Below are positions 12,287 through 33,405 of a DNA stretch of 64,000 nucleotides, one piece after another. The stretch is from positions 1 through 64,000 of the IMG/VR virus record IMGVR_UViG_3300024503_000485, one strand, 5' to 3'. The position numbers and the translations under genes are program-made. Under the pieces are notes generated by a model. That model was given only the letters and a program-made list of their open reading frames with translations, ran no database searches and was not told the DNA's origin. Each line of letters begins with the position of its first letter. The stretch's first letter is position 1.

Positions 12287-12868
12287 TTAGGCTAGATTAA
12301 ATGCTATGCTGACTCGCTGTTTATCTGTGCGGTTAACTCCTACCTTGTGTGTTAACCAACTAGGAAACATGATCAAAGTTCCTGTTTTTGGCTGTATATG
12401 ATGGCTCTGACGTTGTGGCAGTAGATCTGCGGGCCATAGTCTAAGATGATCTACAGGGTTAGGGCTTTTAAAGGTTAAATTACCCTCATCACCATCTGCT
12501 TGATAATAGTAGCAGCCCGAAATAGCTCGTTCCGGATGTACATGATCGTACATGAAGTTTTTGGGCTCGTAGATATTGACCCAGCTGTCTGTGAGCCTAA
12601 AGGGTCTAACTGGATATTTGATAAAATTACACCAATCACGTAGACTTTCAAATATAGAGTCAGTTAGGTGGTTCATGCCCAGGTCCACAATATCGTTGGA
12701 GCCGTCAAATTTAAAGCTGGAACTAACTTCGTCGTCCCAGGGATTATCCTTGACTTCCAACTGGTCTAATGCTTGTTTGATCTGTGCCTGTACTCGATCT
12801 AGTTCTTCGCCCTCTAGTTCACGTACATAAACAGGAGCATAAAATAAGTGTAGTTTTTGTGATTTCAT
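12287..12868 (-). CDS. putative 2OG-Fe(II) oxygenase (TIGR02466-like)
   Basis: SWVNIY...HVH...ISGCYY...GTLIMFPSWLTH...RVSIAFN; start at ATG 12868 (ATGA overlap). Confidence 0.8.
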   Translation of the reverse strand: MKSQKLHLFYAPVYVRELEGEELDRVQAQIKQALDQLEVKDNPWDDEVSSSFKFDGSNDIVDLGMNHLTDSIFESLRDWCNFIKYPVRPFRLTDSWVNIYEPKNFMYDHVHPERAISGCYYYQADGDEGNLTFKSPNPVDHLRLWPADLLPQRQSHHIQPKTGTLIMFPSWLTHKVGVNRTDKQRVSIAFNLA

Positions 12869-13476
12869 TTGAATACCAAGTAAGTTGAAAGAATGTATTT
12901 GGTTTGTCCGTCTTGGGGCATAAGCCCTGCATGAGGAAAATGCCAAGTGGGTGTGAATATACAGAGCCGACCTCGACGAGCAGCCACGGTCATGTTTTCC
13001 AAAGGAAACTCTGTGCCAGCGTCCGAATCGTTGAGATAAAACAAACAGGCCAAAAATCTAGATGAAGTTTCTAGGGTAGTATTATCAGCGTGTAGTTTAA
13101 ACTCATGACGACCATTGGGTCTATAGCATTTGATTCTAAAACCCTCTAGGGCAAAGTCATAGGGCAAGATGTTTAGAGTGTCCCAATCACGCTTATAGTC
13201 ACTGACCAAGGGTATGACCCTAGCTGAGAGTTGATCGCAGGTCTCAGTCCAATCATAGGCCCAGTGGCTGCTTTTCTTATAAAGATCCCAGGGATTACGA
13301 GCCTGAGGGTGGCGTGTAGAGTGTAGATCTAATTCAATTAATTTGGCCCACTCGCCCGGACGTTCCTTATGGAATCGAGCGCAGAGTTCAAAGGCCTTGA
13401 CCATTTCATCGCAGAATTCTGGGTCAAGGGCAGCGTCAATGACCCGTATGTAGTTTTTGTCGTAGACTATTTCCAT
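12865..13476 (-). CDS. prolyl-4-hydroxylase-like 2OG-Fe(II) oxygenase
   Basis: FKLHAD, RFLACLFYLND, GTEF, GRLCIF...FPHAG, KYILSTY. Confidence 0.85.
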   Translation of the reverse strand: MEIVYDKNYIRVIDAALDPEFCDEMVKAFELCARFHKERPGEWAKLIELDLHSTRHPQARNPWDLYKKSSHWAYDWTETCDQLSARVIPLVSDYKRDWDTLNILPYDFALEGFRIKCYRPNGRHEFKLHADNTTLETSSRFLACLFYLNDSDAGTEFPLENMTVAARRGRLCIFTPTWHFPHAGLMPQDGQTKYILSTYLVFK

Positions 13477-15340: not shown

Positions 15341-15779
15341 GGCCCCGCTGTAGAATCAACGTGTACATATATGTAGTATAGGCCTAAAGGCCGAGGGAAC
15401 TATATATACATTCTTACTGAAGGATAAGAATCAAAGATTCTTACTGAGCTGTAGACGTTGATTTTACTGGGGTTTTGCAGCTGGGTCAGTAAGTAGCAAA
15501 AAGTGTGATTTACTGAGCCTAGACTCGCGTACAGGCCCCGCTGCGTAGGGTGTGCGCAAGGAAAAAGTGCAGAAAAGTGTGATAAAGTGTGAAATTGTGT
15601 GGTATTTGAACTATGCCTCATAACCAATTCACCACGGTAGAGTCTACACTAAAAGATTCTAGCCTAGACTCTGCTCAAACGATTCAGAATCCACCATTTC
15701 TCAGGGAGAATCCACCGTGAATCCACCGTGAACTAGTGCTCTTAAACCAGTCTACGGTAGGCGCAAAGTGGCCCCGCTG
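15341..15779. repeat. non-coding spacer with several short repeat families (iteron-like)
   Basis: GGCCCCGCTG x3; CTTACTGA x2 plus an inverted copy; four 10-bp phased AAAGTGTGA-like units 15563-15602; GCCTAGACTC x2; GAATCCACC x3. Confidence 0.8.
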
Positions 15780-15828
15780 CTGTAGATTGTGGTTGACATA
15801 CTCACGTAATGACTATATAATATCGCAT

Positions 15829-16083
15829 ATGACACAAAGAGAAGTATTTGAATATAACAATGAAGAAGAAGCCGAAATGGCTCAGATTCATAGTCTACAC
15901 ATTAATCAGAACGCTATAGATTCTGTACAAGCAGAGTTGGCTCGTCAAAGATCACAGCCTAGTCTAGAGGAATGTGAAGACTGCGGTGAAGCTATTCCAC
16001 AGGCTAGACAGCAAATGGTCCCAGGTTGTACACGCTGCGTATACTGCCAAGGCTTATTTGAGCGTCGTAGAGCTGGATACTAA
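15829..16083 (+). CDS. TraR/DksA C4-type zinc-finger protein
   Basis: CEDCGEAIPQARQQMVPGCTRCVYCQ; N-terminal acidic coiled coil; ATG 7 nt after -10. Confidence 0.85.
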   Translation: MTQREVFEYNNEEEAEMAQIHSLHINQNAIDSVQAELARQRSQPSLEECEDCGEAIPQARQQMVPGCTRCVYCQGLFERRRAGY

Positions 16084-16152
16084 TAGGCCCCGCTGCTATA
16101 CACACGTACATGTATGCAAAAGAAAAGACTATTATCTAAAAGCAGAGACTCT

Positions 16153-16631: not shown

Positions 16632-16708
16632 CACGCATTAGCTCAGTTGGATAGAGCAACAGCCTTCTAAGCTGTGGGTCAGGGGTTCGAATCCCTTATG
16701 CGTGGCCA
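16632..16708 (+). tRNA. tRNA-Arg (anticodon UCU)
   Basis: Cloverleaf: acceptor CACGCAT/ATGCGTG, anticodon arm ACAGC-CTTCTAA-GCTGT, TTCGAAT T-loop, encoded CCA. Confidence 0.95.
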
Positions 16709-16712
16709 GTTA

Positions 16713-16790
<78 letters not shown>

Positions 16791-16832: not shown

Positions 16833-17097
16833 TGTCCAAACGGCTGTGATCGTGTACAATATGCATTTAAACAAGGACAGCAATGACAGCACTACAGCAA
16901 AAGTTCTACGCTGCGTTAGCCTCGCTACAGCAGCACACAAATTTAGATGACGAAGAACAGCAAGACGCAATTGCTGCACTCGCGCAGCTAATCGAGGATC
17001 ACGTCAAATAACCCTAGGCCCTCTAGGGTCTTAGACAAAATTGGTTGACATTTTGGCGCAGAGATCGTACAATATACATATGTTGAAGGAGCGGCGA

Positions 17098-17418
17098 ATG
17101 CGAGCAAAGAGATCAGATCGTAATCACATCATCTATGAACTACGTGTTAACGGTGAGAACTACATTGGTGTCACAGCCAAGACTGAATCAACTATTAATA
17201 AGAGTGTTCGCGCTCGTGCTGCCAAGCACTTCTATCGTGCCAAAACAGAAACTAAGAATTGGCTGCTTTGCTCAGCTCTACGCAAGCTCAACAGCAAAGA
17301 AGAAATTGAAATCATTGTTCACGAGATTGTTCGTGGCAAAGCCCTGGCCCATAAGCGCGAAGTAGAAATCCGCAGACTGGTAGGCCCTACACTAAACACA
17401 GACACACGAGGAGACTAA
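17098..17418 (+). CDS. GIY-YIG-like protein
   Basis: HIIYEL...YIGVT; GGAGCG RBS. Confidence 0.55.
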   Translation: MRAKRSDRNHIIYELRVNGENYIGVTAKTESTINKSVRARAAKHFYRAKTETKNWLLCSALRKLNSKEEIEIIVHEIVRGKALAHKREVEIRRLVGPTLNTDTRGD

Positions 17419-17419
17419 C

Positions 17420-17674
17420 ATGGACTTGACCGTAGAAATGTATCGTATAGATCGTCGCTGCAAAGCGGGCCGAGTACTAGTAATGAAGCAGGACTACACA
17501 GACGTGAGCTGGGCCCAAATGGAGCGCATGTACCCACGTCGTCCACGCTACATCGTAGAGTTTCACGAGACTTGGGTTACAAAGACTAACCTTATGACGG
17601 GCTTGCCCTATCAGGAACGTTACGATACCCCACATTGCTGTTCAGCAGCCAGCGAGACCTACTGGAGCATGTAG
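17420..17674 (+). CDS. hypothetical protein
   Basis: GAGGAGA RBS. Confidence 0.65.
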   Translation: MDLTVEMYRIDRRCKAGRVLVMKQDYTDVSWAQMERMYPRRPRYIVEFHETWVTKTNLMTGLPYQERYDTPHCCSAASETYWSM

Positions 17675-17734
17675 GGGTTGACAACTAGGAATTTTGGCAG
17701 TATAATACAGGCTTACAACGTTAAGGAGCGACCT

Positions 17735-17911
17735 ATGACTAACCCAATCCCTTCTAGCAACATTTGGCACACACCCGCAGATCTCAACGAGCTGCAGGAT
17801 ATGATCAATCAGTTCACAGGCCAGGAAGCTGCGCTGGCTGCACACGTGATGATGTTGACCCTGAACACCTGCCACAAATTAGTCGATGAAGCTATCAAGG
17901 AGGCCGCATGA
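17735..17911 (+). CDS. small early protein
   Basis: Own promoter plus AAGGAGCGACCT RBS. Confidence 0.7.
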   Translation: MTNPIPSSNIWHTPADLNELQDMINQFTGQEAALAAHVMMLTLNTCHKLVDEAIKEAA

Positions 17912-18273
17912 GGTACTGGGACGAACTGCTGCGCGAGCAGCGTAATGGTCTAACCGTGATCGTGGACAAGACCTGGGAAGACTGCTCTATTCGCGATCTC
18001 TTTGATGAAAGCTGCTGTGATGTAGAGGACCTGGAACGTAAGGTTAACAGGGGCGATTTGGATTGGTTTATGCTCAGAGCTCGCGTCATGTACAATGATC
18101 TGGAACTGGGCTCAGAGATCTGTGGAGGGTTCCTCTACGAAGATGCTCGCGATGTGCTGCGTGATGGTATGGCTGACGAGATGATCTGGCAAGCAGAGGA
18201 AGAAGCCAAACGACAATTACCCGGCCTTATTGAAGGGTTATTGCGTGTAGAGGTTGACAAATTGGCTGCGTGA
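17908..18273 (+). CDS. hypothetical early protein
   Basis: GGAGG RBS, ATGA overlap. Confidence 0.65.
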   Translation: MRYWDELLREQRNGLTVIVDKTWEDCSIRDLFDESCCDVEDLERKVNRGDLDWFMLRARVMYNDLELGSEICGGFLYEDARDVLRDGMADEMIWQAEEEAKRQLPGLIEGLLRVEVDKLAA

Positions 18274-18309
18274 GCATACAATAGAGACTTAGCAACAAAG
18301 GAGCGCGAT

Positions 18310-18648
18310 ATGCAGACACTTTTTAGCACAGCAGGCGACGGCTTGTGGAGCAACGTAGCAAAGCCTGTACACATTGTAGACATGCAACTTGCCTACATTA
18401 ACGACGAGAGAGATTTTGGCGAGCTGCGTGTTTACTTTAACACTAAGTTTTGGGACGTTAACAAAGACGGTCTCATTTACACAGACAGCAACTTTATTGA
18501 AGAACTGCGCAATTTTTTAATTGCACAAGAACTAACTGACGACTGCGACTACAGCGAGCAAGGCATGCAGGGAGACAACTACGTTAGCTTAGACGTGGGA
18601 GAGGGCTTTATTGCTGCGTGGGATGCAAAGTTTAACTTGTTTGCATAA
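18310..18648 (+). CDS. hypothetical early protein
   Basis: Own promoter plus GGAGCG RBS. Confidence 0.7.
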   Translation: MQTLFSTAGDGLWSNVAKPVHIVDMQLAYINDERDFGELRVYFNTKFWDVNKDGLIYTDSNFIEELRNFLIAQELTDDCDYSEQGMQGDNYVSLDVGEGFIAAWDAKFNLFA

Positions 18649-18720
18649 GCACAAAACGGGGGTTGACAACAGCCCCCGTTTATAGTACAATAGACACACA
18701 TTAACACAAAGGAGCGTGAA

Positions 18721-19143
18721 ATGGCTACTCGAAGCACTATTGCAATGGAGCAACCCGACGGTCGCGTAATGCAGATCTACTGCCACTGGGACGGTTACCT
18801 TGATCACAACGGAGAGATCCTTCAGGAGCACTATCGTGATCGCGCTAAGGTTTTGGCACTCATGTATCTGGGCGATATCAGCTCCTTAGCTCCTAGCATC
18901 GGAGAACCGCACGATTGGGACAACTGCCCTGAGGGTGTCTGCAACGCCTACGGACGCGATCGTGGCGAATCGGGCTGTGAAGCTCGTGTGTTCAAGGACT
19001 TTGAGGACTACAAGGCCAACCACCAGTACGAAGAATACGAGTATATCTTCCGTTCGGACGATCAGTGGTATGTTTCCGAATACAGCCGAGCCTACCGCGC
19101 ACTTGAGCAGGTGCTGGCAGAAGCAGAAACCCTAGAGGATTAA
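18721..19143 (+). CDS. hypothetical early protein (MATRSTI...IYCHWDGY family)
   Basis: Own promoter plus GGAGCG RBS. Confidence 0.7.
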   Translation: MATRSTIAMEQPDGRVMQIYCHWDGYLDHNGEILQEHYRDRAKVLALMYLGDISSLAPSIGEPHDWDNCPEGVCNAYGRDRGESGCEARVFKDFEDYKANHQYEEYEYIFRSDDQWYVSEYSRAYRALEQVLAEAETLED

Positions 19144-19224
19144 GGGTTATTACTGAATGGGGTTGACAACAGCCTCATTTGGTAATATAATAGAGGTATG
19201 TTCAACAAATGCATAGGAGCGAAA

Positions 19225-20298
19225 ATGCCAGCAGTAATTGAGATTCGTGAGGGTTCGTATAAGATCCGTGGCTCAGATGTGAGCATGGCCGGTAACCGTT
19301 TCGAACTAGTAGAGCAATACAAAGAAGGTGCTCAGGGTGGTTATGTAACCGTAGAAGGTGGCTCTGTACAGCCTGCTAACCCTGGCATTCCAGATCGTAA
19401 GATCCGTATTCGTTGCAGTTCAGCACAAAGTTACATGATTGTCGCCGGTGAAGTGCCAGCAATGCCCGCAGGTGATAAAAGTTTGGAGCAGATTAAAATT
19501 TCAGATAATGCCGTAGCACACGAAACGGACGAGCAGATCATCGAACGTCTTCGTAACCGTTTTGACGTGCTCAAAGATATGACCAAAGCAGTCAAAGAAG
19601 GTACCGTGCGAGCTATGATCGTCACAGGCCCTCCAGGCGTGGGCAAGAGCTTTGGTGTAGAAGAAGTACTAAGCAAGGACGATCTCTTTGATATGATGGG
19701 TCAGCGCAAGCCCAAATATGAGATTGTCAAAGGCGCAATGTCAGCAGTGGGTCTGTACAGCAAGCTCTATCACTACAGCGAAAAAGGCAATGTTATCGTG
19801 TTTGATGACTGCGACTCTGTGCTGTTGGATGACCTTAGCCTTAATATTTTGAAGGCTGCTCTGGACTCTAGCAAGAAGCGTACTATCTCTTGGAACACTG
19901 ACAGCCGTGTTCTGCGTTCAGAAGGAGTGCCAGATCGCTTTGAATTTAAAGCAGGCGCTATCTTTATCACTAACATCAAGTTTGAGAATGTGCGTTCTAA
20001 GAAACTGCAGGATCACCTTGCCGCTCTTGAAAGCCGTTGCCACTACATTGATCTTCAAATGGACACAGATCGCGAAAAGGTCTTGCGCATTAAGCAGATC
20101 ACCCAAGATGGCATGTTGGACAGCTACGAGTTTGAAGACTGCGTTAAGGATGAGATCATTGATTACATTCTTGAAAAACGAGCACAAATGCGTGAGCTGA
20201 GCCTGCGTACGGTACTCAAGGTAGCAGACCTGCGCAAGAGCTTTCCTACAAATTGGAAGAGCATGGCAGAAGTTACCGTTATGAAGCGAGGTGCCTAA
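19225..20298 (+). CDS. AAA+ ATPase
   Basis: Walker A GPPGVGKS, Walker B IVFDDCD, ALESR arginine finger; start at ATG 19225 after GGAGCG. Confidence 0.85.
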   Translation: MPAVIEIREGSYKIRGSDVSMAGNRFELVEQYKEGAQGGYVTVEGGSVQPANPGIPDRKIRIRCSSAQSYMIVAGEVPAMPAGDKSLEQIKISDNAVAHETDEQIIERLRNRFDVLKDMTKAVKEGTVRAMIVTGPPGVGKSFGVEEVLSKDDLFDMMGQRKPKYEIVKGAMSAVGLYSKLYHYSEKGNVIVFDDCDSVLLDDLSLNILKAALDSSKKRTISWNTDSRVLRSEGVPDRFEFKAGAIFITNIKFENVRSKKLQDHLAALESRCHYIDLQMDTDREKVLRIKQITQDGMLDSYEFEDCVKDEIIDYILEKRAQMRELSLRTVLKVADLRKSFPTNWKSMAEVTVMKRGA

Positions 20299-20540
20299 TG
20301 GAAGGCCCGTCTAAGACCTGTACTTGGATTGGGCCCGAGCAGGACCCTTTGAAGCACTGGCCCATTCATTACTGCGGGTGTCCTAGTGTTCAAGGGTCTA
20401 GCTACTGCGCTGATCACTACTGGAAGGTCTATGCTCGAGGCACTTCAGTTAACGGCCGTCGACGTGAACGTGCCATAGAGCAAGAGATTCAACAACTTAA
20501 ACAAGCACAAGAGCTTGAGGAGTATGAAAATGAAAACTAA
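20298..20540 (+). CDS. GcrA C-terminal-like Cys-rich protein
   Basis: TCTWIG...HYCG...GSSYCADH resembles the GcrA pattern CxWPIG...FCG...GxxYCxxH. Confidence 0.55.
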   Translation: MEGPSKTCTWIGPEQDPLKHWPIHYCGCPSVQGSSYCADHYWKVYARGTSVNGRRRERAIEQEIQQLKQAQELEEYENEN

Positions 20541-20810
20541 CATCTTTACAATTGCCCTGCTGGCGCTTGTAATCGTATTCTTTTTTGCCGTAGGTCCTAT
20601 CCTGGTAATTTGGAGTATGAATACACTATTCCCCGTGTTGGCCATTCCGTATACGTTTTGGACATGGTTAAGCGTGGTCTTGCTCGGCGCATTCTTTCGA
20701 GCAAATGTTTCCATTAAACGGAAAGATTGAGGTTGCTATTTTACAACAAGAATGCTACTATATTGACACGCTGTGGAACACAGCCATATAACATAAAGGA
20801 AAACACAGAC

Positions 20811-21086
20811 ATGAAACGTATCTCTAAAGACTCAAAGACTTTTAAGATTTTTACTGCACTACAAAATGGTGACAAACTAACTGCAAGCCAAGCTGAGAAG
20901 CGTTTTGGCGTAAAGAACCTGGCTGCTGAAGCAAGCCGTCTCCGCCAAGCTGGTTATGCTGTTTATGCTAACTCTCGCAAGGCAGGTAATGGTGTTACCG
21001 TTACTGAGTATGAACTAGGCCGTCCTTCACGCGAGATCGTTGCTCTAGGCTACTTAGCTCGTAACATGGGCATGACATTGGCTTAA
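20811..21086 (+). CDS. winged helix-turn-helix DNA-binding protein
   Basis: LQNGDKLTASQAEKRFGVKNLAAEASRLRQAGYAVY...YELG; AAGGA RBS. Confidence 0.75.
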   Translation: MKRISKDSKTFKIFTALQNGDKLTASQAEKRFGVKNLAAEASRLRQAGYAVYANSRKAGNGVTVTEYELGRPSREIVALGYLARNMGMTLA

Positions 21087-21162
21087 TAGGTCGCTCCACA
21101 AAACCAAGCCGATTCGCTCCCGGGGCGGTTTTGGAATAGGGTCCTAAGGGCCCTATTTTTTT
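21086..21162 (+). ncRNA. candidate 3'UTR anti-RBS sRNA A
   Basis: Seed ATAGGTCGCTCC; hairpin CAAAACC/GGTTTTG enclosing CCG-ATTCGCTCC-CGG; terminator AATAGGGTCC-TAA-GGGCCCTATT plus T-run. Confidence 0.55.
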
Positions 21163-21257
21163 GGCCGTTTGTTGCAAAAAAGCCACAGGCCGGCACTCTC
21201 CAAAATGGTTGACAGAACTGCTGTTTGATGGTATAATAGAGTTATTGTTAAGGAGCG

Positions 21258-21905
21258 ATGATGAGCACATTTACAGCAGATCAAGTTTGGGGCCTAGCTG
21301 TTAGGGCTGATACACAGAATGGCGGCTACTGCAAAGAGCCTGTATTCGCTGCTACCGCTACACACGGGATCGATTACAATAACGTGATCAAACAAGCCAA
21401 CAAGGTTCTGGTCAAGAACTGGCTCAGAGAGAATGCTCAGCCTACAGCAGAAGAGATCACTCTTGGCCAAGAGTATCGTAACTATTTCAAAACATTCACC
21501 CTCAAAGCACTCACTGGCAAGATCAATGACTTTGAGACCACAGCTATGAAGATTGCAGCCAAAGACGAGTTCACTGGCCGTGATATGTTGGACTTTGCTG
21601 TTGTCAGCTGTTTACCCAGCGTAGCTCGTCGTGATAAGGCCCAAACAGAGCTCAAGCGAGAGATCTATCAAAGCGAGCAACTCTCCGGCGCTGTAGGTGA
21701 TGAGATCGTAGGGGAGATCGAAGTGATCCGCACACGATTCAACCCTGAATACAACAAGTATCGCATCACTGCTCGTATGGGTGAGAGCTTTATTGATTTT
21801 TGGTACAAGGATGATGTCAAAGGCACTATCCGTATCAAGGGCAAGATCAAGAATGTTCGTGGCGATAAAACAACACAGCTCAACTATGTTAAAAAAGTTG
21901 GTTGA
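21258..21905 (+). CDS. hypothetical early protein (possible C-terminal OB fold)
   Basis: Own promoter plus GGAGCG RBS; ends KGKIK...TQLNYVK. Confidence 0.7.
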   Translation: MMSTFTADQVWGLAVRADTQNGGYCKEPVFAATATHGIDYNNVIKQANKVLVKNWLRENAQPTAEEITLGQEYRNYFKTFTLKALTGKINDFETTAMKIAAKDEFTGRDMLDFAVVSCLPSVARRDKAQTELKREIYQSEQLSGAVGDEIVGEIEVIRTRFNPEYNKYRITARMGESFIDFWYKDDVKGTIRIKGKIKNVRGDKTTQLNYVKKVG

Positions 21906-21982
21906 CAACTGCACCAAGAGGTGCTACAATAATGATACTGGGAAAGTAATTGTTTTAACTCTTTTTATTAGCGAGGTCTAGA

Positions 21983-23068
21983 ATGGCAAAAGCACAAGAC
22001 GTTTCCGTCCGTCAAGTTGGCCCTAAGGGTGCCAAAAAAGCAATCCGTCACGCAATTAAAATGCGTCGTCCTGTATTCCTGTGGGGCCCTCCAGGTATTG
22101 GTAAGTCCGATCTCGTGAAGCAGATCGGTGATGATTCCAACCGTGAGGTTATTGATGTGCGCCTAGCACTTTGGGAACCCACCGACATCAAAGGTATTCC
22201 GTATTACAACGCAGACCAGGGCAAGATGGTTTGGGCTCCTCCCGCAGAACTGCCCATTGACCCAGAGTCCACTGCTATCATCTTCTTGGATGAATTGAAC
22301 TCTGCTCCTCCTGCTGTTCAGGCCGCGGCCTATCAGTTGGTGCTGAACCGTCGTGTTGGTACCTATGTTCTGCCTAAGGGTGTTGACGTAGTCGCCGCTG
22401 GTAACCGTGAAGGTGACCGTGGTGTTACCTATCGTATGCCTGCTCCGTTGGCTAACCGCTTCCTGCACTTGGAAATGAAGGTGGACTTTGATGACTGGCA
22501 AGATTGGGCTACCCTTAACAAGGTGCATCCTGAGGTTGTAGGTTATGTGGGTTTTGCCAAGCAAGACTTGTATGACTTCGATCCTAAGAGCCCTAGCAAG
22601 TCATTTGCTACTCCTCGTTCTTGGAGTTTCGTCAGCGACCTGTTAGGTGATGACGGTGTTGACGAAGATACTTTGTCTACATTGGTAAGTGGTGCTATTG
22701 GTGACGGCTTGGCTGTTAAGTTTATGGCTCACCGTAAGATTGCTGGCAAATTGCCTAAGGCAGAAGACATCCTTATTGGCAAGGTCAAGGACCTTCAGAT
22801 CAAGGAAGTGTCAGCGATGTATTCTTTGACCGTTTCATTGTGCTACGAGTTGAAAGACCGTGCAGAGAAAAAGGTTAAAGATTGGGATGCTCAGGCAGAC
22901 AACTTCTTCCGCTACATGATGGACAATTTCCCAACTGAGATTGTGGTCATGGGTGCTAAGACTGCTCTTACCAACTACGACTTGCCGTTGGACGCTACAA
23001 AGATGAAGAGCTTTGACGAGTTCCACAAGCGTTTTGGTAAGTATGTTTTGAAAGCGATGGAGAATTAA
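21983..23068 (+). CDS. MoxR-like AAA+ ATPase
   Basis: GPPGIGKS, IIFLDE, AAGNR, PLANRF, TPRSW. Confidence 0.9.
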   Translation: MAKAQDVSVRQVGPKGAKKAIRHAIKMRRPVFLWGPPGIGKSDLVKQIGDDSNREVIDVRLALWEPTDIKGIPYYNADQGKMVWAPPAELPIDPESTAIIFLDELNSAPPAVQAAAYQLVLNRRVGTYVLPKGVDVVAAGNREGDRGVTYRMPAPLANRFLHLEMKVDFDDWQDWATLNKVHPEVVGYVGFAKQDLYDFDPKSPSKSFATPRSWSFVSDLLGDDGVDEDTLSTLVSGAIGDGLAVKFMAHRKIAGKLPKAEDILIGKVKDLQIKEVSAMYSLTVSLCYELKDRAEKKVKDWDAQADNFFRYMMDNFPTEIVVMGAKTALTNYDLPLDATKMKSFDEFHKRFGKYVLKAMEN

Positions 23069-23225
23069 GACCTCGCCCATCGCCGGGCGGGGGCTCACCC
23101 AGGGCTTCCGCCCACCTTTTGGAGTGCCGGGCGGTGTTGTAAATACGCAACATCGTCCGGTTTCTTTTTGGTTGACAAACCCGGATCCTGGTGCTATAAT
23201 ATACACATACTAAGGAGAGCGACTA

Positions 23226-24434
23226 ATGTCTACAAACATCGTTGATAAATTAACTACTGCACGGGTCGGTCTATTGCTCAAAGCACCGTTCTTTGGCAAC
23301 ATGGCAACTCGTATGCGTTTAGTCTGTGCTGACGACTGGTGCCCTACTGCGGCGACCAATGGCCGTGACTTTTATTACAACACAAAGTTCATCGAAAAAC
23401 TTTCAGAGAAAAAACTAGAGTTCCTGTTTGGTCACGAGATCCTTCACTGCGTGTTTGATCACTTTGGCCGTGTAGGTAGCCGTGATCGTCAACTTTCTAA
23501 CATCGCACAGGACTTTGCTGTAAACCAAATCCTTGTAGACGAGCGTATTGGTGAGAAGATCACTGAGGTTAAGATCTGTTATGATCCTAAGTTCCGTGGA
23601 CTTGCTTGGGAAGAAATCTACGATATTCTGTATGAAAAAGCAGAGAAGATTCCTATGGATCAACTGATGAAAGAGTTGGGCGATCTGTTGGACGAGCACA
23701 TTAAGGAACAAGAGGGTGCTGGCTCAGAAGATGACAAGACCAAAGACGGTAAGAGCAAGCCTAGCCTTAGCAAAGAAGAAGCAGAACGCATCAAGCAAGA
23801 GATCAAAGAAGCAATGATCCAAAGTGCCGCGGCCGCTGGTGCAGGCAAGACTCCTGCAGGCATTATGCGTATGATTAAGTCTATGACTGAGCCTAAGATG
23901 GACTGGCGTCAGTTGGTGCAACAAGAGATCCAAAGCATTGTTCGCAACGACTACTCCTTCCAGCGTGTTAATCGCAAGAGTATGCACTCAGGCGCAATCT
24001 TGCCAGGCATGAAAGAAGCAACTACCATTGACGTGGCTATTGCTGTTGACATGAGTGGTAGTATTGGTGAAGAAGATGCCAGCACATTCCTTTCGGAGAT
24101 CAAAGGCATCATGGACCAATACGAGGACTTCAAGATCAACCTGTGGTGCTTTGACACAGAGATCTATAACCCACAAGAGATCACTCATGACAACTCACAT
24201 GACTTGCTTGAGTATGAACCTCAAGGTGGCGGTGGCACAGACTTTGATGTCAACTTTACCTACATGGAAGAGAATGACATTCGCCCTAAGAAGTTCATTA
24301 TGTTCACAGACGGCTATCCCTGTGGTAGTTGGGGTCCTGAGGACTACTGCGACACAATCTTTATCGTTAAGGGCAATACACAAGCAGAGGCGCCCTTTGG
24401 TCAAACGGTGATCTACGAAAAAGAGGCGGGCTAG
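23226..24434 (+). CDS. putative metallopeptidase plus VWA domain protein (DUF2201-like)
   Basis: TAATNG, HEILH (HExxH), DMSGS MIDAS, GGGGTDF, MFTDG. Confidence 0.9.
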   Translation: MSTNIVDKLTTARVGLLLKAPFFGNMATRMRLVCADDWCPTAATNGRDFYYNTKFIEKLSEKKLEFLFGHEILHCVFDHFGRVGSRDRQLSNIAQDFAVNQILVDERIGEKITEVKICYDPKFRGLAWEEIYDILYEKAEKIPMDQLMKELGDLLDEHIKEQEGAGSEDDKTKDGKSKPSLSKEEAERIKQEIKEAMIQSAAAAGAGKTPAGIMRMIKSMTEPKMDWRQLVQQEIQSIVRNDYSFQRVNRKSMHSGAILPGMKEATTIDVAIAVDMSGSIGEEDASTFLSEIKGIMDQYEDFKINLWCFDTEIYNPQEITHDNSHDLLEYEPQGGGGTDFDVNFTYMEENDIRPKKFIMFTDGYPCGSWGPEDYCDTIFIVKGNTQAEAPFGQTVIYEKEAG

Positions 24435-25550
24435 GAGAGTGCCGGGGGGTGTGGCTAAAAAGCCACACTTCCACCAAAGGCCCCGCTGCTACACGTATGC
24501 ACGTATATAGATTATGGTTGACAGATAGATAATTTGGCCTTATAATACATATACACAGACACAGAAAGGGGCGGTAAATGGAACTAGTAATTGCATTTGT
24601 CCTTGGGCTCATAGTAATGGACTTAATGTGGGCCTGGCGCTTGGGCATCCCTCAGATGCTTTGGGCACGTTGGAAGTATCGCAAAGTCCTTAAACAAATG
24701 TCAGAACAGGAGCAATCATGAAAGTATTCATCGCAGGTACAATCTTTGGTCTCGTAGTGGCTACCGTAGGATTATCGGGCATCGCTAAGATCTTCGATAA
24801 TGGGGTTGCCAAAGTCCAGGAAGTATCTAAAGAAGCTGCGAAGTAATGCCTAGATACACGTTCTGGCGCAATTCTATAATCTGCGAAGTCTACGAACTTG
24901 AAGCAGGTTCAGAAGAGGAAGCACGTGAAAAGCTCATGAATGGAGAAGTGGACCCAATGACCGAAGAATGGGTTGATTGGGCCACTGACAACTTCGAGCT
25001 GGAAGACGTGGAAGATGAATTGGTAACATTCTTAAAATCAAAGGAAACAACATGACTTTTGGTATGATCGTTGAAGATCCCTTTTATGATGAAGATGGTG
25101 TACTCATTGACGAGGATGCTGATTGGGAAGATGTTGCAGACCCGGGCGACCTAGTCTACAACGAAGACATCGGCGAATGGTTGGACAAAGAGCTAGCTGC
25201 TCACGATCGCACCTACAGCCCATTCGATACAATCAACAGCTAACGTACATCATTTTGGTTGACAACTTGGCTTTTTGGTGTTAAACTATAGGCATAGTGA
25301 AAGGAGCCAGCTGTGAATCAAAATGAATTTGAATACCTGAAGCGAGCCGTTGATGCATTGGGATCGTCAGAGACAACTCCGATGGCCCGTGTCAAGATCT
25401 TAAGGACGATGGAGCAGATCGCCGGACGCTGTGCCGTGGTGATCGAGAGGGAGTTCCAAGACCGCGTAGATCAGAACTTGGCCAATGCACATTTGGTTGA
25501 CCTTTTGAGAAAATGATTGTATAATTTTAACACTAACTTAAGGAGCGAAT

Positions 25551-26177
25551 ATGCCTAATTGGTGCAACAACAACTTGACGCTGGAGCATGATGATCCAGC
25601 AATGATTACCCGTGCTAAAGAAGCACTTGATCGTGGAGAGTTCCTGCAGGAGTTTATTCCTGTGCCCAAAGAACTCACAGAGACCATGGCAGGATCCTAC
25701 GGGGATGATGCCAAACAAAAGGATCTGGAAGCACAGATGAAAGCCAATGTGGCCAAATATGGCTACAGCAACTGGTATGACTTCTGCGTGGGTGAATGGG
25801 GAACCAAATGGGATGTAGGCGGTGATGGACAAAGCGACATCCACCCAGACGGTAAGAGTCTATTCACTTCTTTTGATTCAGCATGGTCACCACCCGTGAA
25901 TGCTTATCAGAAGTTGGAACAACTTGGCTTCCGTGTGAACGCAATGTTCTACGAATCCGGTATGGCATTTGCTGGTATTTACGAAGATGGCAACTGCGAG
26001 GACTTTAGCCTAGAAGGCATGAGTGCCGATGAGATCGAGCAGAACTATCCAGAGTTGGACGAAGCATTCTGCATCGCCGAGGCTATCCGTGAATTCCAGG
26101 AAGAGGACGAAGAGCTCACAGAGTGGATCAAGGATGGTGTTGAGCAGAACAAGAAACTAGGACTTGTTTCAGAATGA
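25551..26177 (+). CDS. DUF1281/YubB ferredoxin-like protein
   Basis: MPNWCNN start, WYDFCVGEWGTKWD, FDSAWSPP, YESGMAFAG. Confidence 0.8.
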   Translation: MPNWCNNNLTLEHDDPAMITRAKEALDRGEFLQEFIPVPKELTETMAGSYGDDAKQKDLEAQMKANVAKYGYSNWYDFCVGEWGTKWDVGGDGQSDIHPDGKSLFTSFDSAWSPPVNAYQKLEQLGFRVNAMFYESGMAFAGIYEDGNCEDFSLEGMSADEIEQNYPELDEAFCIAEAIREFQEEDEELTEWIKDGVEQNKKLGLVSE

Positions 26178-26473
26178 TGCACATTGTTAAACTCGACAAG
26201 AGATACGATGGTTATGGAAGATTTAGCCATCGTGTCGAGTTTATCAGTTATGGCGCAGGTGCGAGGCTTACAGATCAAAAGAATTGGATTAAGTCTCGCA
26301 ACTACTTGTGGACGCAATTCGGTCCGAGTGCCGAATTGCACCTAGCTCGCCCAGAGTTATTCGATGGGGTCCAACCAAAATGGGCCTGGGATGATTCTAA
26401 GAGTGCTATATATTTGAAAGACGAATCTTACACAATGTTCGTTTTGAAATGGGAGTCATGGCAAAATGCCTAG
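26174..26473 (+). CDS. hypothetical protein
   Basis: Coupled ORF. Confidence 0.6.
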   Translation: MMHIVKLDKRYDGYGRFSHRVEFISYGAGARLTDQKNWIKSRNYLWTQFGPSAELHLARPELFDGVQPKWAWDDSKSAIYLKDESYTMFVLKWESWQNA

Positions 26474-26741
26474 AGAGTTTAACTTCAGTTTTCACGTGGT
26501 CTGCGCCGGGGACGGCAAGGCAGACGTGGGCCGAGTCGAAGAAATGATCGATTTGGCCATGCAGGATCTGGTCTACGACGACGAGTTCATCGCCGCCTTG
26601 GACGAGAAGGACAGCGTTACTATTCAAGTAATTCCGCAATTTGGACAAACAAATGGTTGACAAACTTGAATAGTGATGCTACATTATTAACATGCCCAAT
26701 AGGCATATCTTTAACACACACACTTTTTGGAGAACTTTAAA

Positions 26742-27044
26742 ATGGCTACAGATAAGAAATTTGCGGTTGCTGGTGTTTCGACACTGGAAGGTAAGACCAA
26801 GCTTCGTTTCGCTAACGATGTTATGCGCATCAAGATCTTGGCAAAGAACGGTCACAAGGATGTTGAGCTCGTTGAGCTGCCATCAGAGATGACCAAGGCT
26901 GAGGCTGTACAACACCTCAAGAGCGTTGGTTTCGGCTCAGGCAATGCTGCTGTACAAGCTGCGATCGCCTACGCTGAGAAGAAGAATCCAGCCCCTAAAG
27001 CTGTTAAGACTACTGCCGCGAAGGCAGAGGCTGTTACCGCTTAA
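26742..27044 (+). CDS. small basic phage protein with Ala/Lys-rich tail
   Basis: FAVAGVS...KLRFAND.MRIKILAKNGH; own promoter. Confidence 0.75.
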   Translation: MATDKKFAVAGVSTLEGKTKLRFANDVMRIKILAKNGHKDVELVELPSEMTKAEAVQHLKSVGFGSGNAAVQAAIAYAEKKNPAPKAVKTTAAKAEAVTA

Positions 27045-27113
27045 ATCCGATTCGCTCCCGGTAGCGGTAACCTTGGGCCCTAGTATGCACACGTATACTA
27101 GGGCGTTTTTTTT
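27033..27113 (+). ncRNA. candidate 3'UTR anti-RBS sRNA B
   Basis: GTTACCGCT/AGCGGTAAC stem enclosing CCG-ATTCGCTCC-CGG; terminator GCCCTAGTAT/ATACTAGGGC plus T8. Confidence 0.55.
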
Positions 27114-27189
27114 GACTTCGGTTGACAACTGGATTAACTGATCATATAATAGTATTAACGAATTGGAGCACAGGAGCTTAAATACACAC

Positions 27190-27516
27190 ATGAGCAAATT
27201 AGAATACCTTGCAAGACCTCTGGTAGCATTCGATGCTTATAACAAAGATCATAGGCGCTACTACGCAGAGTTCCTAGAATACGGTGGATGGGGGCGATGT
27301 CCAGTTCGCTTTATTTGTCCCAGTGATTCCGGTTCAGATCTAACACTAATGATCAAGAACCACCTAACTGAATACTACATTGATCGCGAGTTTGGGGGCG
27401 GCAAACTGCAACAGCTCAAAAGCGAAGAACTCAGCGAAACCGCAGACGAAATGTATCGAAGAGCAGGGAAACTTCGTAAGGAAGCAGCCGCCCTGTTGAA
27501 TCCCAGGAGAACCTAA
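27190..27516 (+). CDS. hypothetical phage protein
   Basis: RPLVAFDAYNKDHR...WGRCPVRF. Confidence 0.7.
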   Translation: MSKLEYLARPLVAFDAYNKDHRRYYAEFLEYGGWGRCPVRFICPSDSGSDLTLMIKNHLTEYYIDREFGGGKLQQLKSEELSETADEMYRRAGKLRKEAAALLNPRRT

Positions 27517-27902
27517 TGAGCGACCTTGATGTAACCATGATCATCCTTTACGGCCTTGGCCTACTTTCAGGCTGGTGGGCATCTAAGATCTTTCATCTGC
27601 ACCTACTACGCAGCATCCTGAAGGATCTTGGGGTGAGTCAGCAGGATCTACTCGCACTCCTTAACCGATCAGAAGAAGAATCATCCGATGATCCCGAGCT
27701 GGATCAGATCGATATCAAAGTTGAGAAGCATAGTAACACACTCTATGCGTTTCGTAAAGACAACGATCAGTTCCTAGGGCAGGGCAACAGCAAGGAGCAG
27801 CTGATCGAAGCCATGGCGCAGCGTATGAAGAATGTAAGGTTGATCGTGGTTGAGGGCCGTGAATACATGGAGTCCAAAACGGTTGACACGACCGCGGTTT
27901 GA
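27516..27902 (+). CDS. membrane-anchored hypothetical protein
   Basis: N-terminal TM helix, AGGAG RBS. Confidence 0.65.
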   Translation: MSDLDVTMIILYGLGLLSGWWASKIFHLHLLRSILKDLGVSQQDLLALLNRSEEESSDDPELDQIDIKVEKHSNTLYAFRKDNDQFLGQGNSKEQLIEAMAQRMKNVRLIVVEGREYMESKTVDTTAV

Positions 27903-27917
27903 GCTTACAATTGAGTT

Positions 27918-28469
27918 ATGAAAATTACAGAACTCCAGAACCTATACCGCGCAGGCCAGATCATCCGCAAGGCAGATCACGCAGACAAGTTGGACATCCA
28001 ATTGGATCCCACAATGACTCGCGAGCTGTTTCGACAAGAAGTTGGCCGTGTTTACTTCATCGTAGTCAACGGTGAAATCAAGAAGATTGGCGGCTCACAG
28101 GCCAAGGGCGGACTCAAGGGAACCTTAGGGGCCTACTTCACTGGTTTTGCCAAGGGCATGAGCGCCAGGACCTATTGCGTATGGAACTTCATGCGCCAGC
28201 AGATCGATCAAGGGCACACGGTTGAGATCTATGTTACATTTGCTCCCCTGGTTGAAGCAACCATTCCAGGTCCCCTGGGACATGTAACCGTACACATTCC
28301 TGTAGACTATCATACCATTGAGAAGAGCTACGTGGATCACTTCGTGCTGGTCGAGAGCAAGCATCCTTACTTGAACATGCAGGAAAGTGCGGGCCGTTGG
28401 GAAGATACGGGGCTTTTAGAAGGCTATCACGGGCTTTGGGTTCCACAACAAGAAACCCTAGCAGCCTAA
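27918..28469 (+). CDS. GIY-YIG family nuclease (restriction-enzyme/EndoII-like)
   Basis: GRVYFIVVNGEIKKIGGS...VEIYV...IEKSYV...PYLNMQE. Confidence 0.5.
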   Translation: MKITELQNLYRAGQIIRKADHADKLDIQLDPTMTRELFRQEVGRVYFIVVNGEIKKIGGSQAKGGLKGTLGAYFTGFAKGMSARTYCVWNFMRQQIDQGHTVEIYVTFAPLVEATIPGPLGHVTVHIPVDYHTIEKSYVDHFVLVESKHPYLNMQESAGRWEDTGLLEGYHGLWVPQQETLAA

Positions 28470-28548
28470 GGGTTATTCAAAAAAGTGGTTGACAACAGCC
28501 TCTAGATCGCATATAATACAAGCTCAACAAACAACTTAGGAGCGAAAC

Positions 28549-28902
28549 ATGGAAGCACAAGCACGTGAGTATTTTGTCCGTCGTCTTAACGAAGTAGCAC
28601 AAGAAAAAGTGCAGGCCAAAGCAGTAGAACTTTACGGCGCAAGTGGCCGTCCAGAACAGCCTACTTGGGGCATGGTGTTTGAGGGCATTAAATCCGGCGA
28701 GATTACCCTTAAAGCAGACAAGGTGGACTATACGGGTCCTTACCTCAACCCTACGGACGTGGAGTGGCCTGCTATGGAAGCCAAAAAGGCAGAGCTGGAA
28801 GCATATCGCAAGTTGGTAGCCGCTGAGAAGCAACGGGCTATGGACGCTGTCTATTTGGACGAGAGCGCACAAGAAGCCCTTAAGGCTTTTGAAGCAATTT
28901 AA
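28549..28902 (+). CDS. hypothetical early protein
   Basis: Own promoter plus GGAGCGAA RBS, followed by terminator 28911-28936. Confidence 0.7.
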   Translation: MEAQAREYFVRRLNEVAQEKVQAKAVELYGASGRPEQPTWGMVFEGIKSGEITLKADKVDYTGPYLNPTDVEWPAMEAKKAELEAYRKLVAAEKQRAMDAVYLDESAQEALKAFEAI

Positions 28903-30440: not shown

Positions 30441-30752
30441 ATGGAAGCCCTAGTTGAAACAACTGGGGGCCAGTTCCCCGCGCACACATATCTACTAGAC
30501 GGTACTACCCTAGTAGCCTATGTAAAGGTCAACGAAACTACGCCCGTCTATTTCAAAAGCGGTATCAAGGGCTTTGATAAGCGTGGTAGGCAGTTCGTTA
30601 AGGGTAACATCAACTTATTCAAAGTAAAGGCAACTAATGACACAAGATCTGTCCAAGGCTCAAAAGGCCAAGTCTACTCAGTCAACGACGCAGAGAAAAC
30701 CTGTACCTGTCCAGGATTTACATTTAGAGGTACCTGCAAACACTTGGGCTAA
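30441..30752 (+). CDS. SWIM zinc-finger protein
   Basis: CTCPGFTFRGTCKH; GAGGA RBS. Confidence 0.8.
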   Translation: MEALVETTGGQFPAHTYLLDGTTLVAYVKVNETTPVYFKSGIKGFDKRGRQFVKGNINLFKVKATNDTRSVQGSKGQVYSVNDAEKTCTCPGFTFRGTCKHLG

Positions 30753-33350: not shown

Positions 33351-33405
33351 GATGTTAATGATTATATAACATTACTTATCATCTTGTCAATAAAACTAGC
33401 AGATA

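What the first reader, a model, noticed from the sequence alone, without database searches (positions are those of the whole stretch)
15341..15779. Repeat-dense non-coding spacer at the left edge of the early block: origin or genome-end candidate
Seen: about 440 bp without a credible ORF containing CTTACTGA at 15413 and 15440 with an inverted copy at 15486, four 10-bp helically phased units (AAAAGTGCAG AAAAGTGTGA TAAAGTGTGA AATTGTGTGG, 15563-15602), GCCTAGACTC x2, and GAATCCACC at 15687, 15708 and 15719 (11-bp tandem). It sits where the dense promoter array begins. Inference: iteron-like replication origin, pac/terminase site or physical end.
Basis: partly seen in the sequence, partly recalled or inferred. 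Interest (0 to 1): 0.6.

Follow-up and report, generated by a model that had tools for sequence, protein, structure and literature searches.

The report
Conserved punctuation motif and iteron spacer
The repeat-dense spacer is real and is a conserved non-coding control region of an uncultured river jumbo phage, framed by three copies of an invariant, one-strand-only 11-letter motif that nobody has described and whose job (most likely marking early transcription-unit boundaries, less likely a replication origin) is still open.

Summary
192 of 439 bases lie in repeated 8-mers, against 20±18 in shuffles. GGCCCCGCTG(C/T) sits at 15341, 15534 and 15770, which are exactly the finding's edges, and again at 16086 and 24479. 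These are the only copies in the 219-kb contig, and all are on the + strand. In related IMG/VR jumbo-phage contigs the same word (one variant, GACCCCGCTG) is invariant and always on one strand within a genome. It is confined to the early gene block, with 4 copies in a complete 362-kb relative and 19 in another. It is mostly intergenic, often abuts a stop codon, and in 41% of 200 contexts lies 0-60 nt upstream of a sigma70-type promoter. Between copies 2 and 3 lie 10-bp and 11-bp phased repeat arrays. Their position is conserved but their sequence is lineage-specific. I found no conserved ORF, RNA fold or Rfam hit. I also found no DnaA boxes and no GC-skew turn, and terminase lies 50 kb away. 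My best reading is an orientation-dependent boundary signal of early transcription units plus protein-binding arrays. An origin, a genome end or nick sites remain possible. Reads that would decide this were not available.

The parts
15341..15351 (+). Motif copy 1, GGCCCCGCTG-T, 9 nt after the stop codon of the upstream ORF (ends 15332)
   Evidence: two RNA-run contigs end at 15351 and 15367
15345..15472 (.). Unit 1: large imperfect inverted repeat (arms 15345-15367 / 15450-15472). It contains the palindromes TACATATATGTA, GGCCTAAAGGCC and TAAGAATCAAAGATTCTTA, the ATTCTTACTGA direct repeats, and the least stable 40-bp stretch of 14.0-17.5 kb (15400-15439).
   Evidence: strong in this phage (z about -6), weaker in relatives (mean z -1.9)
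15500..15515 (+). Box I, AAAGTGTGATTTACTG, near-invariant in 15 relatives, about 20-25 nt upstream of motif copy 2
15534..15544 (+). Motif copy 2, GGCCCCGCTG-C
15563..15602 (+). Array A: four 10-bp phased units (WWWAGTGYRN) with A-tracts. Its position is conserved and its sequence is lineage-specific.
15615..15627 (+). Box II, GCCTCATAACCA (consensus GCCTCATAA.CCAC), conserved
15671..15685 (+). Box III, CTGCTCAAACGATTC (consensus CTCAAACGGT.C), conserved
15687..15729 (+). Array B: GAATCCACC(A/G)T three times at 21- and 11-bp spacing (family consensus TTCCACCRT, 3-4 copies)
15770..15780 (+). Motif copy 3, preceded by the conserved CTACGGT...AGT, 13 nt upstream of the -35 hexamer
15793..15821 (+). 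First perfect sigma70-type early promoter (TTGACA-17-TATAAT), driving the DksA/TraR-like zinc-finger gene
16086..16096 (+). Motif copy 4, 3 nt after the DksA-like gene's stop. No promoter lies before the next gene, and RNA contigs read through it.
24479..24489 (+). Motif copy 5, between a conserved hairpin (GTGTGGC-loop-GCCACAC) and a perfect promoter at 24518. A syntenic copy is present in relatives.

Best explanation
The spacer is a conserved, non-coding cis-acting control region at the head of the host-RNA-polymerase-transcribed early block of an uncultured freshwater jumbo phage. The contig is a 62%-complete fragment, and the phage is only distantly related to Pseudomonas phage PA5oct. The backbone of the spacer is a clade-wide 'punctuation' word, (A/T)(A/T)A-G(G/A)CCCCGCTG-(C/T). 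I propose that this word is read in one orientation as a boundary signal of early transcription units. It would be an asymmetric site at which elongating host RNA polymerase is paused, stopped or modified, either intrinsically or by a protein bound there. The closest model is the mycobacteriophage stoperator. The two helically phased repeat arrays between copies 2 and 3 would be binding platforms for a lineage-specific DNA-binding protein. Three boundary sites in a row, plus these arrays, would insulate and regulate the first strong early promoter at 15793. Shown: the anatomy, conservation, strand bias, restriction to the early block, intergenic placement and association with promoters.
For: The motif has 5 copies in 219 kb, all on the + strand, against about 0.04 expected from base composition. 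In relatives it occurs 4, 19, 7, 10, 8, 5 and 4 times, always on one strand, with 0 hits for the reversed control pattern. It is confined to the early block of genomes up to 372 kb. It is invariant within diverged flanks in 112-200 distinct contexts, and the only recurrent variant is GACCCCGCTG, which is used at all four copies in L066. It is depleted inside same-strand ORFs (31% against 74% for random positions). It is enriched within 3 nt of a stop codon (14% against 3%), often as TAG overlapping the first G. In 41% of contexts a sigma70-type promoter starts 0-60 nt downstream (control 7.7%), but only 4% have one just upstream. This is the place that terminator hairpins occupy before the other early promoters. 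The word fits the consensus elemental pause g-11 G-10 t-3 g-2 Y-1 (PMC11077087) with the RNA 3' end at the final C/T. No NusG, sigma, T7-type or multisubunit RNA polymerase was detectable, so host polymerase must read the region, as in PA5oct (PMC7318152). Two RNA-run contigs end 1 and 17 nt after copy 1. The unit has no conserved RNA structure (consensus energy -4 kcal/mol over about 300 columns), no Rfam or tRNA hit and no conserved ORF.
Against: No binding protein is identified, and no transcript ends could be mapped. RNA contigs read through copies 2, 3 and 4, so the site is at best a partial stop. The +1 G of the pause consensus is not conserved, and the tolerated variant changes the key -10 G. 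The distance to the -35 hexamer varies from 1 to 51 nt. In locus L107 the motif cluster lies between genes on the opposite strand. Stoperators are single sites, so they do not explain why tandem repeat arrays so often sit beside the motif. Those arrays are what an origin or a centromere-like site would look like. The invariance is partly by construction, because exact words were searched, although the near-match scan limits that concern.
Confidence: 0.38

Rival explanations
1. Replication origin. The phased arrays would be iterons for a phage initiator, unit 1 (inverted repeat plus AT-rich patch) would be the unwinding or cruciform element, and the flanking early promoter would supply activating or priming transcription, as at T4 oriE/oriF or lambda ori. 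The co-oriented motifs might act as polar fork barriers that make replication unidirectional.
For: There are two arrays of 10-11-bp phased direct repeats, conserved in place and lineage-specific in sequence. Array orientation is independent of the motif, which points to DNA-level binding. The least stable 40 bp of the neighbourhood lies in unit 1, and a strong inverted repeat is present. The phage has DnaB-type helicase, primase and a UvsX-like recombinase but no recognised initiator. RNA coverage over the spacer is low.
Against: There is no skew inflection in this contig or in a complete relative, though this is weak evidence because skew tracks transcription. There are no DnaA boxes. No initiator gene is adjacent. 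The complete relative G004 lacks the GTGTGA array, and G008 carries several different arrays beside different motif copies. The AT-rich patch is modest.
Confidence: 0.2
2. RNA-level signal. The motif would be a linear RNA site in polycistronic early mRNA, either a cleavage site of a phage or host endoribonuclease or a shared translational operator. T4 RegB/RegA sites and the cluster K mycobacteriophage start-associated sequence are the models.
For: All copies are co-oriented within a genome. In G008 and G011 the motif sits in very short gaps between same-strand genes, as stop, 0-8 nt, motif, about 8-30 nt, Shine-Dalgarno and ATG, with no room for a promoter or terminator. Copy 4 lies between co-transcribed genes.
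Against: Copies 1-3 and many others precede no gene. Many copies lie upstream of promoters, where transcription is not assured. The distance to the start codon is not fixed. The L107 cluster is antisense to its neighbours.
Confidence: 0.15
3. Packaging site, physical genome end or T5-like injection-stop region. The spacer would mark the edge of a long terminal repeat that carries the early genes, as in PA5oct, T5 and SPO1. The repeats would be bound by terminase or would hold the entering DNA.
For: The distant relative PA5oct has a 39-kb terminal repeat full of early genes (PMC7318152). The T5 iss region is likewise a large untranslated stretch of repeats, inverted repeats and palindromes inside the pre-early terminal repeat, conserved across 25 phages (bioRxiv 10.1101/866236). 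The early block here has a distinct composition (GC +10%). A single distal motif copy recurs about 7.5-8.7 kb downstream in most relatives.
Against: Terminase lies 50 kb away. There are no DnaA boxes, the hallmark of the T5 iss region. Complete relatives assemble as circles broken elsewhere. Contig ends are not enriched at the site. PA5oct has no copy of the motif. Nineteen dispersed copies in G008 do not fit a unique site.
Confidence: 0.1
4. Site- and strand-specific nicks in packaged DNA, as in T5 and BF23, with the motif as the nickase recognition sequence.
For: The copies are few (4-19 per genome), lie strictly on one strand and form a sequence-specific set. T5-like phages carry multiple nicks in one strand (PMC10644984).
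Against: No nickase was identified. The neighbour labelled 'HNH endonuclease' by PHROGs is a DUF2201 metallopeptidase/VWA protein by Pfam. Confinement to the early block and placement at gene boundaries are not expected for nicks.
Confidence: 0.07

Closest known systems
Stoperators of mycobacteriophage L5 and cluster A phages (repressor gp71 sites; from my own knowledge: Brown et al. 1997 EMBO J)
   Same: Both are asymmetric sites of about 13 bp. Both occur in many copies, lie in short intergenic gaps that often touch stop or start codons, keep one orientation with respect to transcription, and include a site next to the early promoter.
   Different: Here there are only 4-19 copies and they are restricted to the early block of a lytic jumbo phage. 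No repressor is known. The sites sit mostly 1-50 nt upstream of -35 rather than over it, and they are often accompanied by tandem repeat arrays.
T5 injection-stop (iss) untranslated region in the left terminal repeat (Davison, bioRxiv 10.1101/866236)
   Same: Both are large untranslated stretches inside the earliest-expressed block, dense in repeats, inverted repeats and palindromes, with an architecture conserved across the family.
   Different: The T5 region is defined by eight ordered DnaA boxes, and none is found here. A terminal repeat and two-step injection are not shown for this phage.
PeSL (promoter-early stem-loop) cassettes of T4-type phages (from my own knowledge: Arbiol et al. 2010 Genome Biol Evol)
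   Same: Both are blocks of small early genes, each preceded by a stem-loop and a near-consensus sigma70 promoter, with conserved short intergenic sequence amid variable genes.
   Different: The conserved word here is not the promoter or the hairpin. It is an extra hairpin-less 11-mer found at only a subset of the boundaries.
ops element / consensus elemental pause (RfaH recruitment site; pause consensus in PMC11077087, PMC6336406)
   Same: Both are near-invariant words of 11-12 nt that start with GGC, occur in few copies and are strand-specific. The motif fits g-11 G-10 t-3 g-2 Y-1.
   Different: ops lies in transcribed leaders downstream of promoters, whereas here only 4% of copies have a promoter just upstream. 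No NusG/RfaH-like gene is present in the phage. The +1 G is not conserved.
Iteron origins (lambda ori, T4 oriE, P4 ori/crr; from my own knowledge)
   Same: Both have arrays of 3-5 helically phased direct repeats, lineage-specific, in an early region beside promoters. The P4 octamer TGTTCACC resembles the TTC(C/T)ACC units.
   Different: The units here are short (10-11 bp) and contiguous. There is no adjacent initiator gene, no skew signal and no demonstrated unwinding element. The arrays are variable or absent in some relatives.

Membership tests
Iteron-type replication origin | Three or more helically phased direct repeats | tested here: met
   There are four 10-bp units at 15563-15602 plus one at 15500, and three 11-bp-type units at 15687-15729. 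The array positions are conserved in 15 relatives.
Iteron-type replication origin | Adjacent AT-rich unwinding element | tested here: inconclusive
   The least stable 40 bp of 14.0-17.5 kb is at 15400-15439, but it is only modestly below the genome mean (-1.09 against -1.28 kcal per step).
Iteron-type replication origin | Initiator gene next to or around the iterons | tested here: not met
   The neighbours are small ORFs without family hits and a DksA/TraR zinc-finger protein. The AAA protein 3.4 kb downstream has no Orc, DnaA or Rep match.
Iteron-type replication origin | Strand-composition (GC skew) turning point | tested here: not met
   The cumulative skew extremes lie at about 0 and 31 kb in G000 and at 331.5 and 5.9 kb in the complete relative G004, whose motif cluster is at 349.2 kb. 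Skew follows gene direction, so this test is weak.
Iteron-type replication origin | Origin activity | not testable with these tools
   This needs marker-frequency analysis, 2D gels or a plasmid assay.
T5-like injection-stop region / oriC-like DnaA array | Ordered DnaA boxes (TTATCCACA) | tested here: not met
   The spacer of G000 and of G004 has no site with one mismatch or fewer, and the density of two-mismatch sites equals background.
pac site / physical terminus | Read-start pile-up or depth step | not testable with these tools
   All runs holding the sequence were served as assembled contigs.
pac site / physical terminus | Proximity to terminase genes | tested here: not met
   The Terminase_6N match is at 66,238-66,870 of the contig, 50 kb away.
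Stoperator-like elongation block | Asymmetric site, multiple copies, single orientation | tested here: met
   There were no reverse-strand copies in the 12 related records or genomes (including this contig) that were pattern-scanned whole, and 0 hits for the reversed control pattern.
Stoperator-like elongation block | Placement in short intergenic gaps at gene ends | tested here: met
   14% of copies lie within 3 nt of a same-strand stop, against 3% for random positions, and copies are depleted within ORFs.
Stoperator-like elongation block | Orientation tied to the direction of transcription | tested here: inconclusive
   This holds for the early blocks of G000, G004, G008 and G011, but the L107 cluster is flanked by opposite-strand genes.
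Stoperator-like elongation block | Cognate DNA-binding repressor | tested here: inconclusive
   The candidates are circumstantial only: a winged-HTH protein at 20727-21086 and a clade-specific 100-aa protein at 26742-27044 that has no fold match.
ops / RfaH-type recruitment site | Location in the transcribed leader downstream of a promoter | tested here: not met
   Only 7 of 200 contexts have a promoter ending 0-60 nt upstream, against 6.9% in controls.
ops / RfaH-type recruitment site | NusG-family reader | tested here: not met
   The phage genomes have no PF02357 match. A host paralogue cannot be tested because the host is unknown.
Structured non-coding RNA | Conserved secondary structure or covariation, or a known family | tested here: not met
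   The consensus fold energy is -4 kcal/mol over about 300 columns on either strand. Rfam gives nothing even at E<=1. Unit z-scores in relatives average -0.9.

The most novel reading that the evidence does not exclude
The 11-mer is a hairpin-independent signal written into the early DNA of a whole clade of 200-370-kb phages that have no polymerase of their own. It would be a consensus-pause-type site at which host RNA polymerase is halted and handed to a still unknown phage or host factor, for termination, antitermination or silencing. The adjacent phased arrays would be the factor's loading platform. This would be a new elongation-control code for jumbo phages. The alternative novel reading is a T5-like injection-stop or origin hub.
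Probability: 0.15. Interest if true: 0.8.

Novelty: new variant of a known kind. Interest (0 to 1): 0.6.

Why it matters
Jumbo phages that lack their own RNA polymerase must steer the host enzyme through hundreds of genes, and how they time early expression is largely unknown. A short, invariant, strictly oriented word confined to the early block of a widespread uncultured freshwater clade is a concrete handle on that problem. The promoters are E. coli-type consensus, so the word can be synthesised and tested with standard holoenzyme in vitro without culturing the host. If the neighbouring arrays instead prove to be the origin, they would be the first origin candidate for this clade. In either case the motif is a precise marker for finding and orienting the early region in fragmentary metagenomic contigs.

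Tried and rejected
- **Known RNA:** ARAGORN and Rfam at gathering threshold, and Rfam at E<=1, gave nothing in the spacer.
- **Conserved RNA fold:** RNAalifold on 15 aligned units gave nothing on either strand. The strong fold of this phage's unit 1 (z about -6) is not general.
- **Small protein:** The + strand 35-aa and - strand 75-aa ORFs are not conserved. The apparent - strand peptide MRHNKNSH... is a translation of the iteron DNA and is truncated to 5-26 aa in several relatives.
- **DnaA boxes:** None found.
- **GC skew:** No inflection in the contig or in a complete relative.
- **Phage-encoded readers:** NusG, sigma70 region 2, T7-type RNA polymerase and Rpb1/Rpb2 domains all gave no match.
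- **Nickase idea:** The 'HNH endonuclease' label from PHROGs on the gene before copy 5 is contradicted by Pfam, which calls it DUF2201.
- **Candidate partner protein (26742-27044):** It is clade-specific and duplicated in relatives. The AlphaFold model (pLDDT 75.5) has no Foldseek match in the PDB. This remains a lead only.
- **PA5oct comparison:** Its two early 'lncRNA' regions have no similar anatomy, and its genome has no motif copy.
- **Literature:** A search for the motif returned only primer hits.
- **Isolate phages:** DNA search of isolate phages found no match.
- **Contig-end hot spot as a sign of a physical end:** About 14 of 66 upstream contig ends lie within 333 nt of a motif copy, which is what the zone's size predicts (my tally). 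The whole early region fragments in assemblies.
- **Motif as sigma54, sigma32 or extended -10 promoter:** Rejected. The spacing does not fit, and no -10 lies at a fixed distance (information content about 0 beyond position 12).
- **Type I-E CRISPR repeat resemblance (shared CAGCGGGG):** Rejected, because the other hairpin arm is missing.
- **Pattern-scan false positives:** Many hits of the motif-pair scan in viral contigs are 15-nt coding tandem repeats and are irrelevant.

Full report
**Context**

The window is the first 64 kb of a single 219,444-bp virus record with 37.8% GC. CheckV rates the record 62% complete. Its replicative helicase is 51% identical to that of Pseudomonas phage PA5oct, and no closer isolate exists. 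Nearly identical DNA occurs in about 20 river-water metagenome and metatranscriptome runs.

The spacer lies between a small + strand ORF that ends at 15332 and a DksA/TraR-type zinc-finger gene. That gene is driven by the first of a long series of perfect or near-perfect sigma70 promoters on the + strand. No sigma factor, NusG, T7-type or multisubunit RNA polymerase is detectable in this contig or in a complete relative. The block is therefore presumably read by host polymerase, as reported for PA5oct (PMC7318152).

**The observation**

Of the 439 bases, 192 lie in 8-mers repeated inside the region, against 20 ± 18 in dinucleotide shuffles. Only 0.27% of equal windows in the contig reach this value. 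The ORFs in the spacer are mechanical and are not conserved.

GGCCCCGCTG occurs at 15341, 15534 and 15770, which are exactly the start, middle and end of the finding, and again at 16086 and 24479. These are the only copies in the whole contig on either strand. Base composition predicts about 0.04 copies.

I fetched 80 related loci through a conserved AAA ATPase 3.4 kb downstream, at 73-100% protein identity. The same 10-mer was present in 3-5 clustered copies at the homologous place, plus one copy about 7.5-8.7 kb further on, always on the sense strand of the block. In 112 distinct contexts the ten letters and the following C/T are fixed while the flanks drift. Only the three preceding positions (A, T/A, A) carry weak information.

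A scan for near matches found one recurrent variant, GACCCCGCTG. Locus L066 uses it at all four positions.

Whole-record scans gave these counts:

| Record | Size | Motif copies | Note |
|---|---|---|---|
| G004 | 363,943 bp, complete | 4 | Effectively circular |
| G008 | 372,016 bp, complete | 19 | All within one 52-kb stretch |
| Five large fragments | — | 7, 10, 8, 5 and 4 | |
| PA5oct | 286,783 bp | 0 | |

No copy lay on the opposite strand in any of these records, and the reversed control pattern never matched.

**Placement of the motif**

Over 177-200 distinct contexts the motif avoids same-strand ORFs: 31% lie inside one, against 74% for random positions. It is enriched directly behind stop codons, with 14% within 3 nt against 3% for random positions. 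Often the G of a TAG stop is the motif's first letter.

In 41% of contexts a sigma70-type promoter begins 0-60 nt downstream, against 7.7% for controls. The distance is broadly spread, with a mode at 7-9 nt. Only 4% have a promoter just upstream.

In the relatives G008 and G011 many copies sit in very short gaps between same-strand genes, a few nucleotides after the stop and 8-30 nt before the ribosome-binding site. In this window the other early promoters are preceded by terminator-like hairpins. The motif occupies that same slot at a subset of boundaries, and copy 5 follows a conserved hairpin.

**Anatomy between the motifs**

I aligned 15 relatives from 60 nt upstream of copy 2 to copy 3. 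The alignment shows a conserved architecture in this order:

- Box I (AAAGTGTGATTTACTG)
- a variable 22 nt
- TGCGTATA followed by the motif
- four 10-bp phased units
- Box II (GCCTCATAA.CCAC)
- Box III (CTCAAACGGT.C)
- three or four TTCCACCRT units at about 11-bp spacing
- ACGGTTCT.TACAGT followed by the motif

More distant relatives keep the layout but change the repeat words. L078 has ATTATAGTGA four times, CTGTAGAAAA four times and GAGAATGGTGG three times. The complete relative G004 lacks array A. In L146 array A is inverted relative to the motif. In G008 and L107 other 10-11-bp tandem arrays flank other motif copies. Position-conserved, sequence-variable, helically phased repeats are what sites of a co-evolving DNA-binding protein look like.

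**Is it RNA?**

- Rfam and ARAGORN are silent on the spacer.
- The consensus fold of the aligned unit is trivial on both strands, at -4 kcal/mol.
- This phage's spacer does fold far better than shuffles (z = -5.0). That comes from a 23-nt-arm inverted repeat and small palindromes in unit 1. Relatives share this only weakly (mean z -1.9 for unit 1 and -0.9 for unit 2).

The four metatranscriptome runs were available only as assembled contigs. The stretch 15368-15486 is never covered, and 15487-15751 is covered only in the deepest run. Two contigs end at 15351 and 15367, just after copy 1. Contigs run through copies 2, 3 and 4. Depths are low (2-10), so gaps are weak evidence. An abundant small RNA is unlikely. 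Some transcription crosses the motifs, and the motif is not an efficient terminator.

**Origin, pac or end?**

- Cumulative GC skew has no turning point at the spacer here, nor at the cluster in the complete relative. Skew follows gene direction.
- There are no DnaA boxes.
- The large terminase gene is 50 kb away.
- Contig ends in related assemblies are frequent throughout the early region and not specifically at the motifs.
- PA5oct has a 39-kb terminal repeat full of early genes (PMC7318152).
- T5 has a repeat-dense untranslated injection-stop region in its terminal repeat (bioRxiv 10.1101/866236).

The last two points keep a terminal-repeat edge conceivable. The read-depth and read-start tests could not be run.

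**Reading**

The motif is a clade-wide, single-orientation, early-block, gene-boundary word. The closest known pattern is the stoperator of cluster A mycobacteriophages. The word also fits the consensus elemental pause g-11 G-10 t-3 g-2 Y-1 (PMC11077087) in the same register as the ops element.

I therefore favour an orientation-dependent boundary signal acting on elongating host polymerase, with the arrays as protein platforms (confidence 0.38). The rivals are:

| Rival | Confidence |
|---|---|
| Iteron origin | 0.20 |
| RNA processing site or translational operator | 0.15 |
| pac site, genome end or injection stop | 0.10 |
| One-strand nick sites | 0.07 |

Four points weaken the favoured reading: the unconserved +1 base, the tolerated G-to-A change at -10, read-through in RNA contigs, and one locus (L107) where the cluster is antisense to its neighbours.

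**Search for the reader protein**

Only four early proteins are shared with the most distant motif-bearing genomes. One is a 100-aa protein at 26742-27044. It is extremely conserved, duplicated in two lineages and absent from 50,697 isolate phage records. It has no Pfam or PHROG family. Its AlphaFold model (pLDDT 75.5) has no PDB fold match. A winged-helix protein at 20727-21086 is another candidate. Neither is linked to the motif by more than co-occurrence.

**Verdict**

The origin/end interpretation is neither shown nor excluded. The more remarkable object is the undescribed invariant motif that frames the spacer.

Noticed in passing
window 12000-35600 (and G004 342-362 kb plus 1-6 kb): The early + strand block has 44-48% GC, against 31-40% in the rest of the contig. 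The complete relative shows the same contrast (about 50% against 40%). This is a sharp compositional island that coincides with the host-polymerase-read genes.
   Followed up: partly
window 16632-16790: tRNA-Arg(TCT) and tRNA-Met(CAT) lie inside the early block. Every RNA-run contig breaks there and apparent depth jumps about 30-fold, probably because of k-mers shared with other organisms.
   Followed up: no
window 15829-16083: The DksA/TraR-type zinc-finger gene lies directly behind the first perfect promoter. The in-frame ATG at 15829 sits at the predicted transcription start, so the mRNA may be leaderless. An alternative start is at 15877.
   Followed up: no
window 21983-24434: This is a MoxR-like AAA ATPase followed by a DUF2201 metallopeptidase/VWA protein. 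PHROGs labels the latter family (phrog_1314) 'HNH endonuclease', which Pfam does not support.
   Followed up: partly
window 26742-27044: This is a highly conserved 100-aa early protein (35 invariant residues in 20 relatives). It is specific to the clade and duplicated in G008 and L107. It has no family or fold match and is a candidate nucleic-acid binder.
   Followed up: partly
window 17045-34296: The early promoters share an extended form, (t)GG-TTGACA-17-TA(T/C)AAT. Most are preceded by a terminator-like hairpin and followed by the ribosome site AAGGAGCG. This layout resembles the PeSL cassettes of T4-type phages.
   Followed up: partly
window 12287-13476 (- strand): Two adjacent 2OG-Fe(II) oxygenase genes lie just left of the early block.
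   Followed up: no
G004 1-127 and 361945-362071; G008 ends: Both 'linear' or 'DTR' complete relatives are circular assemblies. G004 carries a 2-kb strain-variant tail after a 127-nt exact overlap, and G008 has a 128-nt overlap.
   Followed up: yes
L107 1700-2600; L082 (PA5oct) 460-485: GCAAGCATTT tandem units sit directly upstream of motif copies in L107. They resemble the GCATTT(G/A)CATTTT repeats upstream of PA5oct ncRNA001, although PA5oct lacks the motif.
   Followed up: no
L116, L154, L162, L165: GGCCCCGCTG also occurs as part of 15-nt coding tandem repeats (pentapeptide-type) in unrelated viral contigs. These are false positives for any motif-based search.
   Followed up: yes
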